From: Obrimoposthia wandeli
Taxonomy: Eukaryota
Length of the DNA stretch: 64,000 nucleotides
Reading direction: 5' to 3'
NCBI GenBank assembly: GCA_977020255.1
Contig: CDROCS010000506.1
Coordinates: forward strand, 1,612,001 to 1,676,000
The notes beneath the pieces were generated by a model. That model was not told the DNA's origin. It made no database searches and saw only the letters and a program-made list of their open reading frames with translations. The position numbers were made by a program, and so were the translations under genes. Shown in pieces: positions 339-8,036 of the stretch (positions are counted from its first letter, which is position 1; each line of letters begins with the position of its first letter).

Positions 339-1106
339 ATGACATTTACACAATCAGGAATTGCACTCATCATTGGTGGCTCAAGTGGCATGGGCTTTGA
401 AACAGCAAAACAGCTTGTAGAAAACAAAGTACCCGTGGTTATTATTGGTAATAATCAAAAAAAATTAGATAACGCAGTTGCCCAGTTAAATGAAATTGGT
501 GAGGCTTCAGGTATTCAATTAAACTTATATGATAAAGACAGCGTGGCTAAATTTATTACTGATATTGCCGTGCAAGAACATAATATTAGCTATCTTGTTA
601 ACTCCGCTGGCTATTTTAATCCTAAGCCTTTTATCGAACATACAGAACAAGACTACGACCTGTATCATGAATTAAATAAAGCGACTTTTTTGCTCACGCA
701 AGCCGTAACAAAACGCATGATCAACAATGGTGGTGGTAATGTTGTTAACATTGGTTCTATGTGGGGAAAACAAGCGATTAAAGCCACACCGTCTTCAGCT
801 TATTCAATGGCGAAAGCAGGTCTACATGCTTTAACGAAAAATATGGCGATGGAATTGGCAGAACACAATATTAGAGTAAACGCGGTATCGCCTGCGGTGG
901 TCAAAACACCAATATATGAAACATTCATCAGCCCAGCAGACATGGAAGCAACATTAGCCAGCTTTAACGATTTCCACCCTATCGGTCGGGTCGGTACACC
1001 GGAAGACATAGCGAACAGTATTTGCTTCTTACTTTCCGATCAATCAAGTTGGGTAACAGGTGCTATTTGGGATGTAGACGGTGGCGTGATCGCGGGTCGA
1101 AATTAA
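339..1106 (+). CDS. Short-chain dehydrogenase/reductase (SDR)
   Basis: GGSSGMG Rossmann motif, VNSAG, YSMAK catalytic YxxxK, NAVSP and DVDGG motifs. Confidence 0.92.
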
Positions 1107-1254: not shown

Positions 1255-1848
1255 ATGACGTCATCAATGAATCTAGAATTATTTTCTCGAGAACCGCAAC
1301 AACAACTCTTACCCTATGATGGCGAAGCTTGGCTGTATCCCAATTTTTTTACTGATCTAGATTTAGCTGAACTTAACTCCAGTATTCAATGGCAAGAACA
1401 GCAACTTTTTATGTACGATCAATGGGTAATACCAAAACGATTAGTCTGTCTGTATACCAATAAAAAACACAGTTATAACAACATGACCCATCCAATCTTA
1501 GATTGGCCAACATCACTGTTGCAGCTAGCTAATAAAATAACAGCGGTACATGGTGAAGAATTTAATGCTGTGTTATGTAACTTATACCGTAATGGTAGTG
1601 ATTATGTGGGTTGGCATAGTGATGATGAAAATAACATGGATCAGAGCTGTATCGCCTCCGTTAGTGTTGGCGCTACACGCAGTTTCAAATTTCGCCACAA
1701 AACCACAAAAGAGCAAGTTTCAGTGGAACTAGAACAAGGAGATTTACTGCTAATGCGTTATTGCCAACAGCATTGGCATCACGCCTTACCCAAGCGACTT
1801 AAAGTTGATACATCTCGTATTAATTTGACGTTTCGGCGTATTATTTGA
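1255..1848 (+). CDS. AlkB-family 2OG-Fe(II) dioxygenase (alkylated DNA repair type)
   Basis: LCNLYRNG, GWHSDDE (HxD), WHHALP distal His, RINLTFR 2OG-binding motif. Confidence 0.88.
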   Translation: MTSSMNLELFSREPQQQLLPYDGEAWLYPNFFTDLDLAELNSSIQWQEQQLFMYDQWVIPKRLVCLYTNKKHSYNNMTHPILDWPTSLLQLANKITAVHGEEFNAVLCNLYRNGSDYVGWHSDDENNMDQSCIASVSVGATRSFKFRHKTTKEQVSVELEQGDLLLMRYCQQHWHHALPKRLKVDTSRINLTFRRII

Positions 1849-2046
1849 GTTTTATAATATTTACTGATTATTTTAAATTTTCATCAAACGAGGTTCGTTC
1901 AACGGTCATCTACGTTAACTTTAATGAGATAGCTTTGTGCATGTTAAAGTATCGGATATAGGCGAAGAAATTAACCTAAGGGTGATAACTGAGTTTCTAG
2001 GACATGTAAGGGAATAGATAGTCCCAAAACAATAAATAGCCACCAA

Positions 2047-2928
2047 TTAAACAACTTTCAATTGGTGCTTACGACTGCAGGACCAACGGAAATAGTCTCT
2101 AACCACAGAGGAAAACATCTGAGTAAGGGAATTATCAGCATGGTCATTATACGCCATAGAAATTTCTAAATTACCCAAAGGGGGAAATCCCTCAGCTTCA
2201 GTTAATACTTTAAAATCCTGATTAGATGTACTCGCCAAAATTGCTGAAACATAATATCCCGATGATACTGCTGCAAGAATACCAGCATGGCTAGAACTGT
2301 GGAAACCCATAGTATAATCCTTTCCTACCTGCACTAATCCATTTAAGGCTATTTCACGATCAGCGCAACCTTCAGAGAACAAAGCGAGCGGCACGGGAGT
2401 CTTTTTATATATGTCGGACGTACGAGAACACATCCACAGCAAGGGTTCTACATGTAACGTTTCACTATTTATATGACTTGGACAACATTGTGTCAGCACT
2501 ATATCTAGCTGTCCTTTTTCATACATCGACCAAATAGATTCGCTGTAATCACAATGCACTTCAATTTGTAACCCGGGGTAGCGCTCTGCACACGACATCA
2601 ATATATCTTTCAAAAAACAGGTAGCGTAAGTATCTGAAGTGCCTATACGTAACCAACCTTTCGGTTGATTTTCGCATAAAGCCAAAACCGCCTCGTCATT
2701 AATAGACAGCATTTTAACTGCATAAGGCAATAACCGCTCCCCTTGAGCAGTCAACTTCACACCGTTGCGATTTCGTATAAATAAAATAGCACCGACTTGT
2801 TTCTCTAACTTCTGAATTTGCTGGCTGATTGCGGATTGGACTCGACACAAACGTTCAGAAGATTTTGAAAAGCTCTTAAGTTCTGCCACTGTCACAAATG
2901 CTCTTAACTGAGATGTATCGAAGTTCAT
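2047..2928 (-). CDS. LysR-family transcriptional regulator
   Basis: N-terminal HTH (LRAFVTVAELKSFSKSSERL...QSAISQQIQKLE), LRIG, LDIVL; 293 aa. Confidence 0.93.
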   Translation of the reverse strand: MNFDTSQLRAFVTVAELKSFSKSSERLCRVQSAISQQIQKLEKQVGAILFIRNRNGVKLTAQGERLLPYAVKMLSINDEAVLALCENQPKGWLRIGTSDTYATCFLKDILMSCAERYPGLQIEVHCDYSESIWSMYEKGQLDIVLTQCCPSHINSETLHVEPLLWMCSRTSDIYKKTPVPLALFSEGCADREIALNGLVQVGKDYTMGFHSSSHAGILAAVSSGYYVSAILASTSNQDFKVLTEAEGFPPLGNLEISMAYNDHADNSLTQMFSSVVRDYFRWSCSRKHQLKVV

Positions 2929-3064
2929 ATACCCACCGTTGTATTACAGTTTGTGATTTAACTAATCATTATTATTAATTTTTATAATGGTAATTGCAAT
3001 GCTAGTTTAGCCTTTGAAAAATCACTTCAATTTAAAATCAATAAATACAAAAAGGTATAGATTT

Positions 3065-3288
3065 ATGGCTTCTCACATCCTTGGTAAAATCGACTTAGCA
3101 CGCTTTCAGTTTATCGAAAATAAATTCGAGAATAATGATTCGCCAGCAAGTAACGTGGAAGTTGAAAACAGTCGAGAAAACGTACTGATGATAATGATCT
3201 TGTTATTAAAAGCCAGAAAATGAAACGTTATTTAATCGAGCATCGTGAAATGAACGAACGCTTCACTATTAATTCTTGGGCTGCATAA
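3065..3288 (+). pseudogene. Internally deleted, frameshifted relic of an L-proline hydroxylase-like 2OG-Fe(II) dioxygenase
   Basis: Frame from ATG 3065 begins MASHILGKIDL; a second frame ending at TAA 3288 reads RTDDNDLVIKSQKMKRYLIEHREMNERFTINSWAA. Both resemble my recollection of the termini of Streptomyces proline 3-hydroxylase (MRSHILGKIEL...; ...ERFSLTSW). Only 224 bp remain. Confidence 0.7.
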
Positions 3289-3304
3289 CATAGAGGATAG
3301 ATCG

Positions 3305-4189
3305 ATGTTAAATCTAGAAAAAATCTCACCAATACTCTTTCTTCTCATGTGGAGCAGTGGCGCTATTTTCGTAAAAATGGGATTAGAAGATGCATCGGTC
3401 TGGTCATTTCTGACATTACGAGTCACTGGTGCCTTCGTATTAATTACCATAATTTCCATATTCTGGCGAGGCTCACAATTTACTTCATTAGCTAGCTTAC
3501 AGCGCCCTAGTCTGATGAAACTGTTATTGTCCGGTTTTCTATTACAGGTGTGTTATCAAGGTAGCTACTTTCTTGCCATTCATTATCAACTTTCCCCAGG
3601 AATAGTGGCTATGGTGCTGGGATTACAGCCTCTATTAACACCATTTTTGAGTAAAGAACATGTCTCATTAAAAAGCTATCTTACGCTCATCTTAGGTTTT
3701 GCAGGATTAATTATTGCTGTATATGGCGCTAGAGATATTAGCCAGATTACCTTCTTAGGACTACTATTCGCTGTTGCGGCGGTGTTAGCTATTACTACGG
3801 GATCTGTGTATCAAAAACAAATTCAAGTTCACCCTATTGCGTCTGCATTAATTCAAAATGCTTTTGCAGCGTGCATATTTTTAGTTATTTCATTGTCGGT
3901 TGGCTGGGAAGTAAATTGGACGACACAATTTATAATTTCTGCAGCATGGATGATTGGCGTGGTCTCGACAGGTGCAATCTTGTTACTACTGTATATGCTA
4001 ACCAAAAATTCTGCCAGCAGTGTCAGTGTATTGTTTTATCTTGTACCTATTCTAACGATGGCATTTGATTATATGGCCTTCGGCACGACCATCACAATAA
4101 CAACAGTATTCGGTTCGGGCATGGTTATTGGTTCGATCTATTTGTTCAGACAACCAACGATGGCGCCAAAATTAACGAAAATTAATTAA
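3305..4189 (+). CDS. EamA/DMT-family transporter (probable amino-acid or metabolite exporter)
   Basis: About 10 hydrophobic segments in two EamA repeats, LLMWSSGAIFVKMG and LQPLLT motifs; RBS AGAGGA upstream. Confidence 0.88.
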   Translation: MLNLEKISPILFLLMWSSGAIFVKMGLEDASVWSFLTLRVTGAFVLITIISIFWRGSQFTSLASLQRPSLMKLLLSGFLLQVCYQGSYFLAIHYQLSPGIVAMVLGLQPLLTPFLSKEHVSLKSYLTLILGFAGLIIAVYGARDISQITFLGLLFAVAAVLAITTGSVYQKQIQVHPIASALIQNAFAACIFLVISLSVGWEVNWTTQFIISAAWMIGVVSTGAILLLLYMLTKNSASSVSVLFYLVPILTMAFDYMAFGTTITITTVFGSGMVIGSIYLFRQPTMAPKLTKIN

Positions 4190-4568
4190 CCAATCCAGTT
4201 CGACACCAGATAACCTTAACTTAATTTCAGTAAGTTAAAATTGTACCGTATAGCTCTTAAAATATGGTCTCTTTAAAGTACAGGAGCAAATTTTATAAGC
4301 GTCATAACATGAATAAGTTCATTCATAACACGGGATTCGAATCATTCAAAACTGCCGTATTATTATACGTAAATATAAAATTCACAAATAATAGTCGATC
4401 TAGATCACACAGAATGAAATTAGATAAGTGTTTGAGAAACAAATGAAAATAACATGTACCTCAAAAGTAGTGTTGAAATTTAACCTGTTTTTTAAAAATG
4501 GTGTGATTTTGTTAAATGTAATTGAATGATATCTTAAATGCCATGCACATTTTTTAATGGAATAATTA

Positions 4569-5036
4569 ATGAAAGCCGAGCTTACTAATTTAGATTTACA
4601 ACAACTTGAAGATAAGTTATTTGATGAATCAACATCTGAAGAATTTTTAGCGTCACTTAAAGCATCCGCTGTAGATAATGCCGATATTAGCGAACTCATG
4701 TACCGCTATTATCTCTGTGCGGTTGACTACCCTAACGCCATCCCTTTTTTAAAACTAGCTGATACATTTAATGATGGTTACGCTCAGCTTTGTCTAGCAT
4801 CACTTTACCAGCAAGGTAAACATTGTGATAAAGATGAAGATTATGCATTTAAATTATTTGAAAAGGCCGCTGCTAATGGGGAAGCAGAAGCACAGCATGA
4901 ATTAGCCCTACAGTTAATCTTTAATGCCTGTGATCTAGAAGATGAAGATATTAAATTAGGTCATTACTGGCTCAATGAAGCAGTGCTAAACGGCAATGCT
5001 GACTCTGAAATACTTCTTGCGACACTCAGCCATTAA
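4569..5036 (+). CDS. Acidic Sel1-like repeat protein
   Basis: Sel1-type repeats AQLCLASLYQQGKHCDKDEDYAFKLFEKAAANG and AQHELAL...GHYWLNEAVLNG; no signal peptide. Confidence 0.7.
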   Translation: MKAELTNLDLQQLEDKLFDESTSEEFLASLKASAVDNADISELMYRYYLCAVDYPNAIPFLKLADTFNDGYAQLCLASLYQQGKHCDKDEDYAFKLFEKAAANGEAEAQHELALQLIFNACDLEDEDIKLGHYWLNEAVLNGNADSEILLATLSH

Positions 5037-5381
5037 ACATAATGCATCGAAATTGATGCCGTATTGTTCTAGAAAAGATAAAGGGGTTGGGATGATGAGC
5101 TCATCACATCCCCTACGGTAAAATCACACAACTTCATATAGCATATGCACTTTCAGTAATACCAATCATGATGAAATAACGCCACGACCTCAACATCAAT
5201 AAATTCCCCGAATTACCCATAGCAATAGACCCCACAATGTGACTCTATTGTTTAAGCCTGAATCAAAATTAATAAAGTACTAGAACCTGTTTCAGGTCGT
5301 CCTAAATCTTGTTCAAGGGCGTTTTTTATCATGTACATAGACATACTGAGCTTCTTTTAATTTAAATCAGGAGTTATTCAA

Positions 5382-6401
5382 ATGAAATTGTCTACAGTAC
5401 TCATTATCATATTTATATCTATTACTAAGGGAGCCTCAGCCAGCTCTATTGGATTTCAACAATTCGAGTTAAGTGATGATGTTACTCGCCCACTAGATAT
5501 AACGATATGGTATCCCACCTTACAAAATTCGGTATCAACCTCAATCGCTGAAAATATTGTTTTTGTTGGTACACAAGTAATCAAGAATGCCTCAATCCCC
5601 GTCCAAAAGTACCCCCTTGTATTACTATCTCATGGATACCGCGGCAACTGGCGAAATCTAAACTGGCTAGCAAGTAAGTTGGCACTAAAAGGGTTTATAG
5701 TTGTAGCTCCCAATCATCCAGGTACCACAACGTTTGACCATTCTGCATCGCAAGCATCGCAGTGGTGGCAACGTCCTCACGATTTGGTGCGCGTATTAGA
5801 TCACCTACTGGAAGATACAGCTTGGCGCGCCGTGGTAGATTCTGAAAGCGTATCAGCTATCGGTCACTCGATGGGAGGCTGGAGCGTCATGCAATTAGTC
5901 GGCGCACAACTTGACCGCAAAACATTTCAAAAGCAGTGTCGGCTGTATCCCAACCCCAGAACCTGTGGATTAGGGAGCGAACTTGGACTAACTTCACCAC
6001 AGCTTGAAGAGCCAAAATCCCTTAACTTCTATGATCCTAGAATCAAAAAAGCAGTAATTTTAGATCTAGGTCTAGCACGAAGCTTCTCTATAGAAAGTAT
6101 GAGTAAGGTGAACACGCCAGTACTGATCCTAGGTGCAGGGATCGATATCGGGGATTTGCCCCAAACAATGGAATCCGGTTATTTGGCCGAACATCTACCA
6201 TTATTTAACCGCCGCTATAAGGTGTATGGACAGGCAATGCACTTCAGCTTCATGCAATTGTGCAAACCTAATGCAATAGCTCTCATCGAAGAGGAAACAC
6301 CAGGTGATGGAATTGTGTGTAAGGATGGTACAGGTATAAAAAGACAAGAATTACATAATCAGATCTTTAAGGATATTTTAGGTTTCATAACTCATTCATA
6401 A
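5382..6401 (+). CDS. Exported alpha/beta hydrolase (dienelactone-hydrolase / PAF-acetylhydrolase-like)
   Basis: Signal peptide, LLSHG, GHSMGG nucleophile elbow, HFSF catalytic His region. Confidence 0.85.
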   Translation: MKLSTVLIIIFISITKGASASSIGFQQFELSDDVTRPLDITIWYPTLQNSVSTSIAENIVFVGTQVIKNASIPVQKYPLVLLSHGYRGNWRNLNWLASKLALKGFIVVAPNHPGTTTFDHSASQASQWWQRPHDLVRVLDHLLEDTAWRAVVDSESVSAIGHSMGGWSVMQLVGAQLDRKTFQKQCRLYPNPRTCGLGSELGLTSPQLEEPKSLNFYDPRIKKAVILDLGLARSFSIESMSKVNTPVLILGAGIDIGDLPQTMESGYLAEHLPLFNRRYKVYGQAMHFSFMQLCKPNAIALIEEETPGDGIVCKDGTGIKRQELHNQIFKDILGFITHS

Positions 6402-6419
6402 CAAATTAACTGCATGTAA

Positions 6420-6459
6420 TATATAGGGTACTATCGTCAGTCTGGAAGTACCCTATATA
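6420..6459. terminator. 13-bp inverted repeat between convergent hydrolase and AraC genes
   Basis: TATATAGGGTACT-N14-AGTACCCTATATA. Confidence 0.55.
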
Positions 6460-6471
6460 AATTGAATATCA

Positions 6472-7527
6472 TTACGTTCCTAAAATCACTGCTGTATCAT
6501 ACCTATATACACTGGGTGTTTTCCCTGTAATACGCACAAATTCACGGTTAAAGTTCGACTTTGTTTGAAAACCAGAACTAAGATAGATATCAGTTATACT
6601 GTCTTCAGTACTAACAAGTAGCTTTTTAGCATATGTGATACGGTACTCATTGAGCACTTTAGAGATGTTCATGGCGCAAACTTGATTAACGGCCATTGAA
6701 ACTTGCCGCGCAGGGGTACCTATTTTCCGCGATAAACGACCCAAGGTTAAATTTGGATCGCGGAACGCTTCTTGTTCCTGCATCAGCGCATCAATTTTTC
6801 GTACAATGCTCTTAGCATCCAACTCTGACAGTCGAACACTTTTCAGGGGTGAATCAATACGACCATCAGTCGGATAATTTGGTTGTGAATCTGATAATGT
6901 CTCAGGCTCTGCTCTGGCTGTGCTGAAACTGACAATAATGACACCAACAACCACAGTTGGAATAAGAAGAAGATAACTAAGCGACAAGATGTATAGCGCA
7001 TGCTCTCCTCCGTAAACAAGAAAATCAAACGACAGCACGCCATCAATGCAAGCAGACACAAGTAACATAATACCTGCAATACGCTCCGAAAAGACCACTC
7101 GTTCAGCATCACAAATCCGAACATCTTCCGGGATCGACAATGAGTCACAAATAAGTAAAACACCATAGACCAAATAGAGCATAGTCAAAATAACATCTAT
7201 CGCATCAATCCAGAATTGGAACCAAAAGGAACATACAGTGATGACAATAGGTCCTGACAAGTGCAGTAACGAAATGCGTGCTCTGTAGTGTGCTTTAGCA
7301 AAAATATACCAAGCCGTAACTGGCAGACACGACGCGAAAATCGGTTGTAAGAATCTGAACATTGCCACATCAAACGTCCAGCGTAGTCCAACCACTAACG
7401 TACTTATTGCACACAAAATAATGAACAAAGAAGGCATTTTCCCCTCAATGGGCAGCTTGGTGAATAGAAGTATGGCTATAACCACAAGTAGCAGTGACAT
7501 GACAAAAGGTAGTGGGATGGCAAGCAT
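6472..7527 (-). CDS. Membrane-anchored AraC-family regulator
   Basis: Multiple N-terminal TM segments; C-terminal AraC HTH (LTLGRLSRKIG...; SITDIYLSSGFQTKSNFNREFVRITGKTPSVYR). Confidence 0.9.
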   Translation of the reverse strand: MLAIPLPFVMSLLLVVIAILLFTKLPIEGKMPSLFIILCAISTLVVGLRWTFDVAMFRFLQPIFASCLPVTAWYIFAKAHYRARISLLHLSGPIVITVCSFWFQFWIDAIDVILTMLYLVYGVLLICDSLSIPEDVRICDAERVVFSERIAGIMLLVSACIDGVLSFDFLVYGGEHALYILSLSYLLLIPTVVVGVIIVSFSTARAEPETLSDSQPNYPTDGRIDSPLKSVRLSELDAKSIVRKIDALMQEQEAFRDPNLTLGRLSRKIGTPARQVSMAVNQVCAMNISKVLNEYRITYAKKLLVSTEDSITDIYLSSGFQTKSNFNREFVRITGKTPSVYRYDTAVILGT

Positions 7528-7911
7528 TAAGATTCCATTATGATATTAAGGTCTGCGATAAGGTTATGTTTTTAACAACCGTATAAACAGTGATAAAATA
7601 TAACATCATGTATAGTAAGTTAAAATTAACAAAATGAGGATAATTATTTAAAGTAGGTTATATGTATATTTAATTAGCCTCCGTAAGACATCAAAAAACA
7701 ATCTTCAAAGTACAAGACGGTGTTAGATCTAGTGAACTATTTTCTTAAATAGCTTGAGTACAGATTCTGTATGCGAAAAAACTAATATGGACAGGAGTAA
7801 TTTTTCAAGAGTAATAAAGTGAGTTTATTGCTGAGTATAAATTTAGGGATATGACTTAAGGAAATACGAGGATAACTTGTCTTGGAAATAAATAGCATTG
7901 TGCCAGATACA

Positions 7912-7941
7912 ACAAAGCCCCAACTTTCGTTGAGGCTTTGT
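7912..7941 (-). terminator. Intrinsic terminator downstream of tRNA-Leu
   Basis: Minus strand ACAAAGCCTCAAC-GAAA-GTTGGGGCTTTGT, 10 nt after the tRNA CCA. Confidence 0.75.
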
Positions 7942-7951
7942 CATTTAAAGA

Positions 7952-8036
7952 TGGTGCCCGAGGGCGGACTTGAACCGCCACTCCTTTCGGAAGAGGATTT
8001 TGAATCCACCGCGTCTACCGATTTCACCACTCGGGC
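7952..8036 (-). tRNA. leuX: tRNA-Leu(CAA), 85 nt, long variable arm, encoded CCA
   Basis: Minus strand GCCCGAGTGGTGAAATCGGTAGACGCGGTGGATTCAAAATCCTCTTCCGAAAGGAGTGGCGGTTCAAGTCCGCCCTCGGGCACCA; acceptor stem GCCCGAG/CTCGGGC, T-arm GGCGG-TTCAAGT-CCGCC, anticodon CAA. Confidence 0.96.

What the first reader, a model, noticed from the sequence alone, without database searches (positions are those of the whole stretch)
3065..3288. Unannotated collapsed relic of a proline-hydroxylase-like gene
Seen: 224 bp with RBS and ATG giving MASHILGKIDL, then patches (ARFQFIEN, DSPASN), a frameshift near GAGAAAA at about 3173-3180, and a C-terminal frame DDNDLVIKSQKMKRYLIEHREMNERFTINSWAA ending 16 bp before the EamA start. 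Established (from memory, needs alignment): Streptomyces proline 3-hydroxylase starts MRSHILGKIEL, contains EDSPLAFHSN and ends VVKAEQIRDFAVEARALSERFSLTSW; these enzymes are about 280-290 aa. Inference: roughly three quarters of the gene, including the HxD...H iron triad, was lost through several deletions while both ends were kept. The ORF track shows it only as a junk 69-aa ORF.
Basis: partly seen in the sequence, partly recalled or inferred. Interest (0 to 1): 0.72.

Follow-up and report, generated by a model that had tools for sequence, protein, structure and literature searches.

The report
Deletion remnant of proline hydroxylase gene
The 224 bases are the dead stump of a proline-3-hydroxylase-type gene in a Moritella bacterium. 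One 730-base deletion removed the whole catalytic core, which makes this a correctly spotted but ordinary pseudogene.

Summary
The window is Moritella-like bacterial DNA, on a contig of more than 1.6 Mb inside a 1.35 Gb assembly. Three other Moritella genomes carry an intact 954-bp (317-aa) gene between the same LysR and EamA genes. That gene matches Pfam Pro_3_hydrox_C (5.7e-18) and Asp_Arg_Hydrox (1.4e-13), and Streptomyces proline 3-hydroxylase PDB 1E5R (4.5e-70).

The window keeps codons 1-39 and 282-317, which match the intact protein at E 1.8e-8 and 2.4e-12. The rest, including His132, Asp134, His182 and Arg192, is gone.

- The loss is one 730-bp deletion between two copies of the 6-bp repeat AAAACG (junction at 3177-3182), not several deletions.
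- "DSPASN" lies in a Moritella-specific N-terminal insert. It is not the counterpart of the Streptomyces EDSPLAFHSN motif.

Contigs built from reads of the likely source run span the junction without a difference. An independent food metagenome holds both the deleted form and a near-identical strain that runs on into the intact gene, so the deletion looks recent and polymorphic.

LysR, the promoter region and EamA are intact. The hydroxylase-EamA pair is conserved across Proteobacteria and its function is uncharacterised. Interest is low.

The parts
2047..2928 (-). Intact divergent LysR-type regulator gene (293 aa), the left member of the three-gene cassette
   Evidence: Pfam HTH_1 1.1e-19 and LysR_substrate 4.2e-20. 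It has the same length as the PE36 orthologue, about 90% DNA identity, and dN/dS 0.08.
2929..3064 (.). Divergent intergenic (promoter/operator) region with the ribosome-binding site of the dead gene
   Evidence: It aligns with the PE36 intergenic region with only two 1-bp indels. The consensus promoter scan was not above shuffled expectation, so promoter positions are inferred only.
3065..3181 (+). N-terminal remnant: codons 1-39 of the hydroxylase, in the original frame
   Evidence: Ungapped match to nt 1-118 of the intact alleles. E 1.8e-8 and 77% identity to PE36 residues 1-39.
3177..3182 (+). Deletion junction: the single remaining copy of the 6-bp direct repeat AAAACG. In the intact gene this repeat stands at nt 113-118 and nt 843-848.
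   Evidence: The two BLAST segments overlap here. 954 - 224 = 730 bp missing, which is not a multiple of 3.
3182..3223 (+). Out-of-frame tail read from the original ATG (VLMIMILLLKARK, then stop), which gives a 52-codon nonsense ORF
   Evidence: Translation.
3177..3288 (+). C-terminal remnant: codons 282-317 plus the stop codon, in the +1-shifted frame
   Evidence: Ungapped match to the last 112 nt of the intact alleles, 90% identity. E 2.4e-12 and 82% identity to PE36 residues 279-317. Pfam Pro_3_hydrox_C positions 75-101, E 0.014.
3289..3304 (+). 16-bp spacer with the EamA ribosome-binding site (GAGG), conserved 15/16 with PE36
3305..4189 (+). Intact EamA-family transporter gene (294 aa), the conserved downstream partner of the hydroxylase
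   Evidence: Pfam EamA 5.6e-21. 89% aa identity to PE36 with the same length. dN/dS 0.14.

Best explanation
Window 3065-3288 is a pseudogene. It is what remains of a 954-bp gene for an Fe(II)/2-oxoglutarate-dependent free imino-acid hydroxylase of the L-proline cis-3-hydroxylase family, after one 730-bp deletion between two copies of the 6-bp direct repeat AAAACG. This is the signature of replication slippage or another RecA-independent, microhomology-mediated illegitimate recombination (the mechanism is inferred). The deletion removed codons 40-281, which hold the whole double-stranded beta-helix core with the iron ligands His132, Asp134 and His182 and the 2-oxoglutarate-binding Arg192. It also shifted the frame, so only a 52-codon nonsense ORF can be translated and no enzyme activity can remain. 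The gene was the middle member of a discrete accessory cassette: a divergent LysR regulator, the hydroxylase, and an EamA transporter. The regulator, the intergenic region, the EamA ribosome-binding site and EamA itself are intact. The stump is therefore most likely now just a transcribed 5' leader of EamA (inferred, not shown). The deletion is evolutionarily recent and polymorphic among near-identical strains.
For: Intact 317-aa orthologues sit between the same LysR and EamA genes in Moritella sp. PE36, MAG DT_65 and G012. They match Pfam Pro_3_hydrox_C 5.7e-18 and Asp_Arg_Hydrox 1.4e-13, PDB 1E5R 4.5e-70 and 4P7W 2.5e-30, and carry H132/D134/H182/R192. The relic aligns to the intact DNA as two blocks that overlap in AAAACG, with no other indel inside the gene and exactly 730 bp missing. 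Both pieces are significant in a whole-assembly search and no second copy exists. In the likely source run, a 358-bp Logan contig covers 2890-3247 with 0 differences at depth 38, against flanks of 35-42. In an independent food metagenome, one contig bridges the junction (3146-3800) and another follows 3040-3182 and then continues for 255 nt into intact-gene sequence. dN/dS of the retained pieces in their ancestral frames is 0.22 and 0.08, like the neighbours (0.08, 0.14), with no further stops or indels, so there is no sign of long neutral decay.
Against: All read evidence comes from Logan contigs, not raw reads, and these drop rare variants. The independent bridging contig has only 31 nt on the left side of the junction. 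The likely source run is not independent of the assembly. The substrate of the intact Moritella enzyme has never been assayed, so 'proline' is a family-level label; the TIGR04531 'nonproteinogenic amino acid hydroxylase' model scores 129 bits, below its 300-bit cut-off. Continued expression of EamA through the stump is untested, and the promoter scan was uninformative. The dN/dS values rest on only about 35 codons each.
Confidence: 0.93

Rival explanations
1. Assembly collapse: the bacterium really has the full-length gene and the assembler skipped 730 bp.
For: The junction lies in a short repeat. A near-identical strain with the intact gene exists in another sample.
Against: A 6-bp repeat is far too short to collapse an assembly. 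An independently built short contig from the likely source run spans 2890-3247 with no difference at the same depth as the flanks, with no loose end at 3182 in that run. A second study's contig also bridges the junction. No unplaced copy of the missing 730 bp is found anywhere in the 1.35 Gb assembly.
Confidence: 0.02
2. Stepwise erosion by several deletions, with surviving internal patches.
For: None beyond a superficial resemblance of DSPASN to the Streptomyces EDSPLAFHSN motif.
Against: Ungapped comparison from both ends meets at one point, and the length difference is exactly one gap of 730 bp. DSPASN is residues 25-30 of the contiguous N-terminus, present in the same place in all intact Moritella alleles, in a segment that does not align with 1E5R.
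Confidence: 0.02
3. The stump has acquired a new role, for example the 52-codon ORF acting as a leader peptide or small protein that tunes EamA expression.
For: The ATG, ribosome-binding site and upstream region are retained. The ORF ends 82 bp before EamA. No terminator-like site lies between them.
Against: The tail after the junction is an accidental frame. The deletion is polymorphic and recent. No conservation of the new ORF can be shown, because no other deleted allele was recovered from genomes or JGI metagenomes.
Confidence: 0.03

Closest known systems
L-proline cis-3-hydroxylase type II of Streptomyces sp. TH1 (PDB 1E5R/1E5S)
   Same: The intact Moritella orthologue aligns over residues 41-315 with chain residues 14-290 at E 4.5e-70. 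It shares the MxSHILGKI(D/E)L start, the PHRDFVEL iron motif (H107/D109), H158, R168, R97, and the ...ERF(S/T)(L/I)(T/N)SW end. The relic keeps exactly those two termini.
   Different: The relic lacks everything between them and is frameshifted. The Moritella proteins have an extra segment of about 28 residues after residue 12, and their substrate is untested. The actinomycete homologues sit in natural-product (NRPS) contexts, whereas the proteobacterial ones are paired with an EamA transporter.
L-proline cis-4-hydroxylase of the Mesorhizobium/Sinorhizobium type (PDB 4P7W/4P7X)
   Same: Same Pfam architecture (Asp_Arg_Hydrox + Pro_3_hydrox_C). The intact orthologue matches at E 2.5e-30.
   Different: A much weaker match than to the cis-3 enzyme. 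Regioselectivity cannot be read from sequence.
Annotated Moritella 'putative L-proline 3-hydroxylase' proteins (e.g. Moritella sp. PE36 WP_006032384.1; M. viscosa entries in the same 90% cluster)
   Same: True orthologues: same locus between LysR and EamA, and 77-82% identity to the two surviving pieces.
   Different: All 15 listed cluster members are full-length at 317 aa. The window's allele is the only deleted one recovered from genome collections.
Short-direct-repeat (microhomology-mediated) deletions that create bacterial pseudogenes
   Same: A single gap bounded by a 6-bp direct repeat of which one copy remains. It is frame-disrupting, and the neighbouring genes are untouched.
   Different: Nothing unusual. 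The mechanism itself (slippage versus end joining) cannot be told from sequence.

Membership tests
Fe(II)/2OG-dependent proline 3-/4-hydroxylase family (Pfam PF05118 + PF05373; 1E5R-like) | Family HMM match above the curated cut-off | tested here: not met
   Relic: the C-terminal piece scores 16 bits against a cut-off of 25 (E 0.014), and the N-terminal piece has no hit. The intact syntenic orthologue scores 65.4 and 51.4 bits, both above cut-off. The relic is therefore a descendant of the family by orthology, not a member by profile.
Fe(II)/2OG-dependent proline 3-/4-hydroxylase family (Pfam PF05118 + PF05373; 1E5R-like) | HxD...H iron-binding facial triad | tested here: not met
   H132, D134 and H182 of the intact Moritella protein (equivalent to H107, D109 and H158 of 1E5R) lie inside the deleted codons 40-281.
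Fe(II)/2OG-dependent proline 3-/4-hydroxylase family (Pfam PF05118 + PF05373; 1E5R-like) | 2-oxoglutarate-binding arginine and the double-stranded beta-helix core | tested here: not met
   R192 (equivalent to R168) and the whole Asp_Arg_Hydrox domain (residues 54-200) are deleted.
Fe(II)/2OG-dependent proline 3-/4-hydroxylase family (Pfam PF05118 + PF05373; 1E5R-like) | Hydroxylation of free L-proline or a related imino acid | not testable with these tools
   No assay exists for any Moritella orthologue. No paper was found linking Moritella or EamA with this enzyme.
Pseudogene formed by a single microhomology-flanked deletion | Intact orthologue at the same locus in relatives | tested here: met
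   LysR, a 317-aa gene and EamA are present in three Moritella species genomes and three JGI contigs.
Pseudogene formed by a single microhomology-flanked deletion | One gap, bounded by a short direct repeat of which one copy remains | tested here: met
   AAAACG stands at nt 113-118 and nt 843-848 of the PE36 and DT_65 alleles, with one copy at window 3177-3182. The gap is 730 bp and there are no other indels. In the M. viscosa-like G012 allele the right-hand copy is only AAACG (5 bp).
Pseudogene formed by a single microhomology-flanked deletion | The junction is real in sequencing data, not an assembly artefact | tested here: met
   The junction is bridged by contigs from two studies. These are contigs only; raw reads were not available.

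The most novel reading that the evidence does not exclude
The dead gene belongs to an uncharacterised, horizontally mobile cassette found across Proteobacteria: a proline-3-hydroxylase-like enzyme immediately followed by an EamA transporter, often with a LysR regulator. The cassette may make and export, or import and modify, a hydroxylated imino acid. The hydroxylase may be repeatedly discarded while the transporter and regulator are kept: here by deletion, and in a Celerinatantimonas genome by a frameshift. That would imply that EamA has a value independent of the enzyme, or that the enzyme is costly in host- or food-associated niches.
Probability: 0.15. Interest if true: 0.4.

Novelty: new member of a known kind. 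Interest (0 to 1): 0.18.

Why it matters
For annotation, it turns a 'junk 69-aa ORF' into a documented pseudogene with base-exact deletion endpoints. It also shows that this Moritella strain cannot make the hydroxylated product that close relatives, including the fish pathogen M. viscosa, can presumably make. It is a clean, datable example of a microhomology deletion that is still polymorphic among near-identical strains. The side observation that the hydroxylase and the EamA transporter travel as a conserved pair offers a modest, testable lead on the physiological role of free-proline hydroxylases in Proteobacteria, where they have so far been studied mainly as biocatalysts. None of this would surprise a specialist.

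Tried and rejected
1. A Pfam scan of the two fragments alone gave nothing for the N-piece and a sub-threshold hit for the C-piece. The identification had to come from the syntenic orthologue.
2. A PF05373 search of the window's own assembly found only a noise hit on another contig (E 2.9, with stops).
3. An exact junction-pattern scan of JGI metagenome contigs gave 0 hits.
4. An EamA-anchored scan of metagenome contigs found only relatives at 89% or lower, all with the gene intact, and no allele of the same species.
5. None of the 15 listed members of the 90% protein cluster belongs to the window's lineage. The true parental allele is therefore known only from a 255-nt loose end in run X2.
6. 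The sigma-70 promoter and terminator scan gave no signal above shuffles and no terminator.
7. A repeat search at the cassette borders (2027 and 4267) found only chance-level short repeats, and no terminal repeats that would indicate a transposon.
8. Literature searches for the enzyme together with EamA or Moritella found nothing specific.
9. Not used, because the family assignment was already unambiguous: structure prediction, fold search and the large representative-protein search.

Full report
**What is in the sequence.**
- An ATG at 3065, behind an AAAGG ribosome-binding site, opens a frame beginning MASHILGKIDLARFQFIENKFENNDSPASNVEVENSRE. This frame then runs into nonsense and stops at 3221-3223.
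- A second frame, shifted by one base, reads KRTDDNDLVIKSQKMKRYLIEHREMNERFTINSWAA and stops at 3286-3288, 16 bp before the ATG of an EamA-family gene (3305-4189).
- Upstream, on the other strand, lies a LysR-type regulator gene (2047-2928) (Pfam).
- The mechanical ORF list shows only a 69-aa TTG ORF at 3014-3223.

**Where the window comes from.** The window is G000:C506:1612001-1676000 of a 1.35 Gb, 6912-contig assembly, but its genes are bacterial. The closest EamA relatives in the species-genome collection are Moritella sp. PE36 (89%) and a Moritella MAG (88%), followed by Vibrio at 71%. My assignment rests.

**The intact gene.**
- In PE36 (L002), MAG DT_65 (L003) and a third Moritellaceae species genome (G012, L008), the same LysR and EamA genes flank an uninterrupted 954-bp, 317-aa gene. 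By the names in the protein cluster, G012 is probably M. viscosa.
- The gene starts MASHILGKIDL and ends ERFTINSWAA.
- It matches Pfam Pro_3_hydrox_C (5.7e-18) and Asp_Arg_Hydrox (1.4e-13), both above cut-off.
- It matches the solved Streptomyces proline 3-hydroxylase 1E5R/1E5S at E 4.5e-70 over residues 41-315, and L-proline cis-4-hydroxylase 4P7W at 2.5e-30.
- From that alignment, the iron ligands H107/D109/H158 and the 2OG-binding R168 of 1E5R correspond to H132, D134, H182 and R192 of the Moritella protein. R97 of the Streptomyces enzyme, highlighted in the title of PMC9968057, corresponds to a conserved R122.

**How the relic arose.** BLASTN of window 2929-3304 against the PE36 locus gives two blocks, at 85% and 90% identity, that overlap in the query at the letters AAAACG.
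- Ungapped comparison from the two gene ends against all three intact alleles meets at that hexamer.
- In PE36 the hexamer stands at nt 113-118 and again at nt 843-848. The window has one copy, at 3177-3182.
- The length difference is 954 - 224 = 730 bp, and there is no other indel within the gene.
- The loss is therefore a single deletion between 6-bp direct repeats, the classic footprint of slippage or microhomology-mediated illegitimate recombination. That mechanism is an inference from established knowledge.
- Because 730 is not a multiple of three, the downstream remnant is out of frame.
- Codons 1-39 and 282-317 survive (24% of the gene). Codons 40-281, which hold the entire catalytic core, are gone.
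DSPASN is residues 25-30 of the contiguous N-terminus and lies in a Moritella-specific insert of about 28 residues that does not align with 1E5R. The real counterpart of EDSPLAFHSN was deleted.

**Significance, and absence of another copy.** I searched the whole assembly in six frames with the PE36 protein. Only the two pieces turned up, at E 1.8e-8 (residues 1-39, 77%) and E 2.4e-12 (residues 279-317, 82%), plus one noise hit.

**Is it an assembly artefact?** All rows below come from Logan contigs laid on 2600-3800.

| Run | Source | What the contigs show |
|---|---|---|
| X19 | Holds 98% of the sampled words; probably the source sample | A 358-bp contig covers 2890-3247 with no difference at depth 38, against flanks of 35-42. 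No loose end at the junction. |
| X2 | Independent food metagenome | One contig bridges the junction (3146-3800). A second contig matches 3040-3182 with three differences and then continues for 255 nt with letters beginning ACTGTAAATTAG, which is what follows the left repeat copy in the intact alleles. |
| X1 | Another food metagenome | A contig passes the junction by only 9 nt. This is suggestive only. |
| X3 | Marine metagenome | Uninformative. |

The deleted form is therefore real DNA, and a near-identical strain still has the gene. These are contigs, not raw reads, and they can hide minor variants.

**Age of the deletion.** In their ancestral frames, the two remnants differ from PE36 with dN/dS of 0.22 and 0.08. 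LysR gives 0.08, EamA 0.14, and the intact hydroxylase between PE36 and G012 gives 0.16. The remnants have no extra stops or indels. The site count is small. Even so, together with the polymorphism seen in X2, this points to a recent event.

**Context, and what was lost.**
- Homology between the window and the PE36, DT_65 and JGI loci is confined to 2027-4267, which is just the three genes. Both flanks differ.
- Only 3 of 13 Moritellaceae species genomes, and 5 of 401 sampled genomes of the order, have the gene.
- It is therefore an accessory cassette. No terminal repeats mark its borders.
- The hydroxylase is immediately followed by an EamA gene in every proteobacterial locus examined: Moritella, G133, G370, Aeromonas, Zooshikella, Pseudomonas, Rhodospirillum and Stenotrophomonas.
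- A LysR gene is adjacent in four of those lineages. IS transposases lie nearby in Zooshikella and Aeromonas.
- A Nocardia homologue sits beside an NRPS instead.
- I found no paper linking the enzyme with EamA.
- The likely ancestral function is regulated hydroxylation of a free imino acid coupled to its transport. The substrate and the direction of transport are unknown.
- In the window only the enzyme is destroyed. LysR, the intergenic region, the 16-bp spacer with the EamA ribosome-binding site (15/16 identical to PE36) and EamA are all intact. No terminator-like site lies between the stump and EamA.
- The stump probably survives as a transcribed leader. That is an inference.

**Verdict.** This is a real, correctly interpreted pseudogene of a known enzyme family. 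It is now defined to the base, with the mechanism corrected to a single microhomology deletion. It is useful for annotation and a tidy example of recent gene loss, but biologically ordinary. The conserved hydroxylase-EamA cassette and a possible second, independent inactivation in G133 are the only leads of wider interest.

Noticed in passing
L015:1495-2378 (genome G133; protein P0057 is named Celerinatantimonas yamalensis by NCBI): The same LysR / hydroxylase / EamA cassette is present, but the hydroxylase is split into 74-aa and 226-aa ORFs by a frameshift next to a C-run (about L015:2154-2175). NCBI annotates only the 226-aa piece. This is either a second independent inactivation of the gene or a sequencing error.
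   Followed up: partly
L023, L024, L025, L029, L030, L016 (gene at 4001 or 3001 in each; 1495-2376 in L016): The proline-3-hydroxylase-like gene is immediately followed by an EamA transporter gene in all proteobacterial loci examined. A LysR gene is adjacent in several, and IS transposases lie nearby in Zooshikella and Aeromonas. A Nocardia homologue (L031) sits next to an NRPS instead. The pair appears to be an undescribed functional unit.
   Followed up: partly
window 2027-4267 versus L002, L003, L019: Similarity to other Moritella genomes stops sharply about 20 bp beyond LysR and about 80 bp beyond EamA. The three-gene module sits in a different genomic neighbourhood in this genome. In L019 the sequence right after the module matches window 7760-8005, so about 3.5 kb (4268-7759) is extra here.
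   Followed up: partly
whole window (G000:C506:1612001-1676000): The window is bacterial (Moritella-like, 40.8% GC) but lies on a contig longer than 1.6 Mb inside a 1.35 Gb, 6912-contig assembly. A near-complete bacterial replicon has therefore been co-assembled with a much larger, presumably eukaryotic, genome. Near-identical DNA occurs in food and marine metagenome runs.
   Followed up: no
window 1255-1848 (+) and 339-1106 (+): A second, unrelated 2OG-Fe(II) oxygenase (AlkB-like, Pfam 2OG-FeII_Oxy_2, 2.3e-31) lies just upstream of the LysR gene, with a 255-aa ORF (339-1106) before it that I took for a short-chain dehydrogenase from its sequence without scanning it. Neither is part of the cassette in other Moritella.
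   Followed up: no
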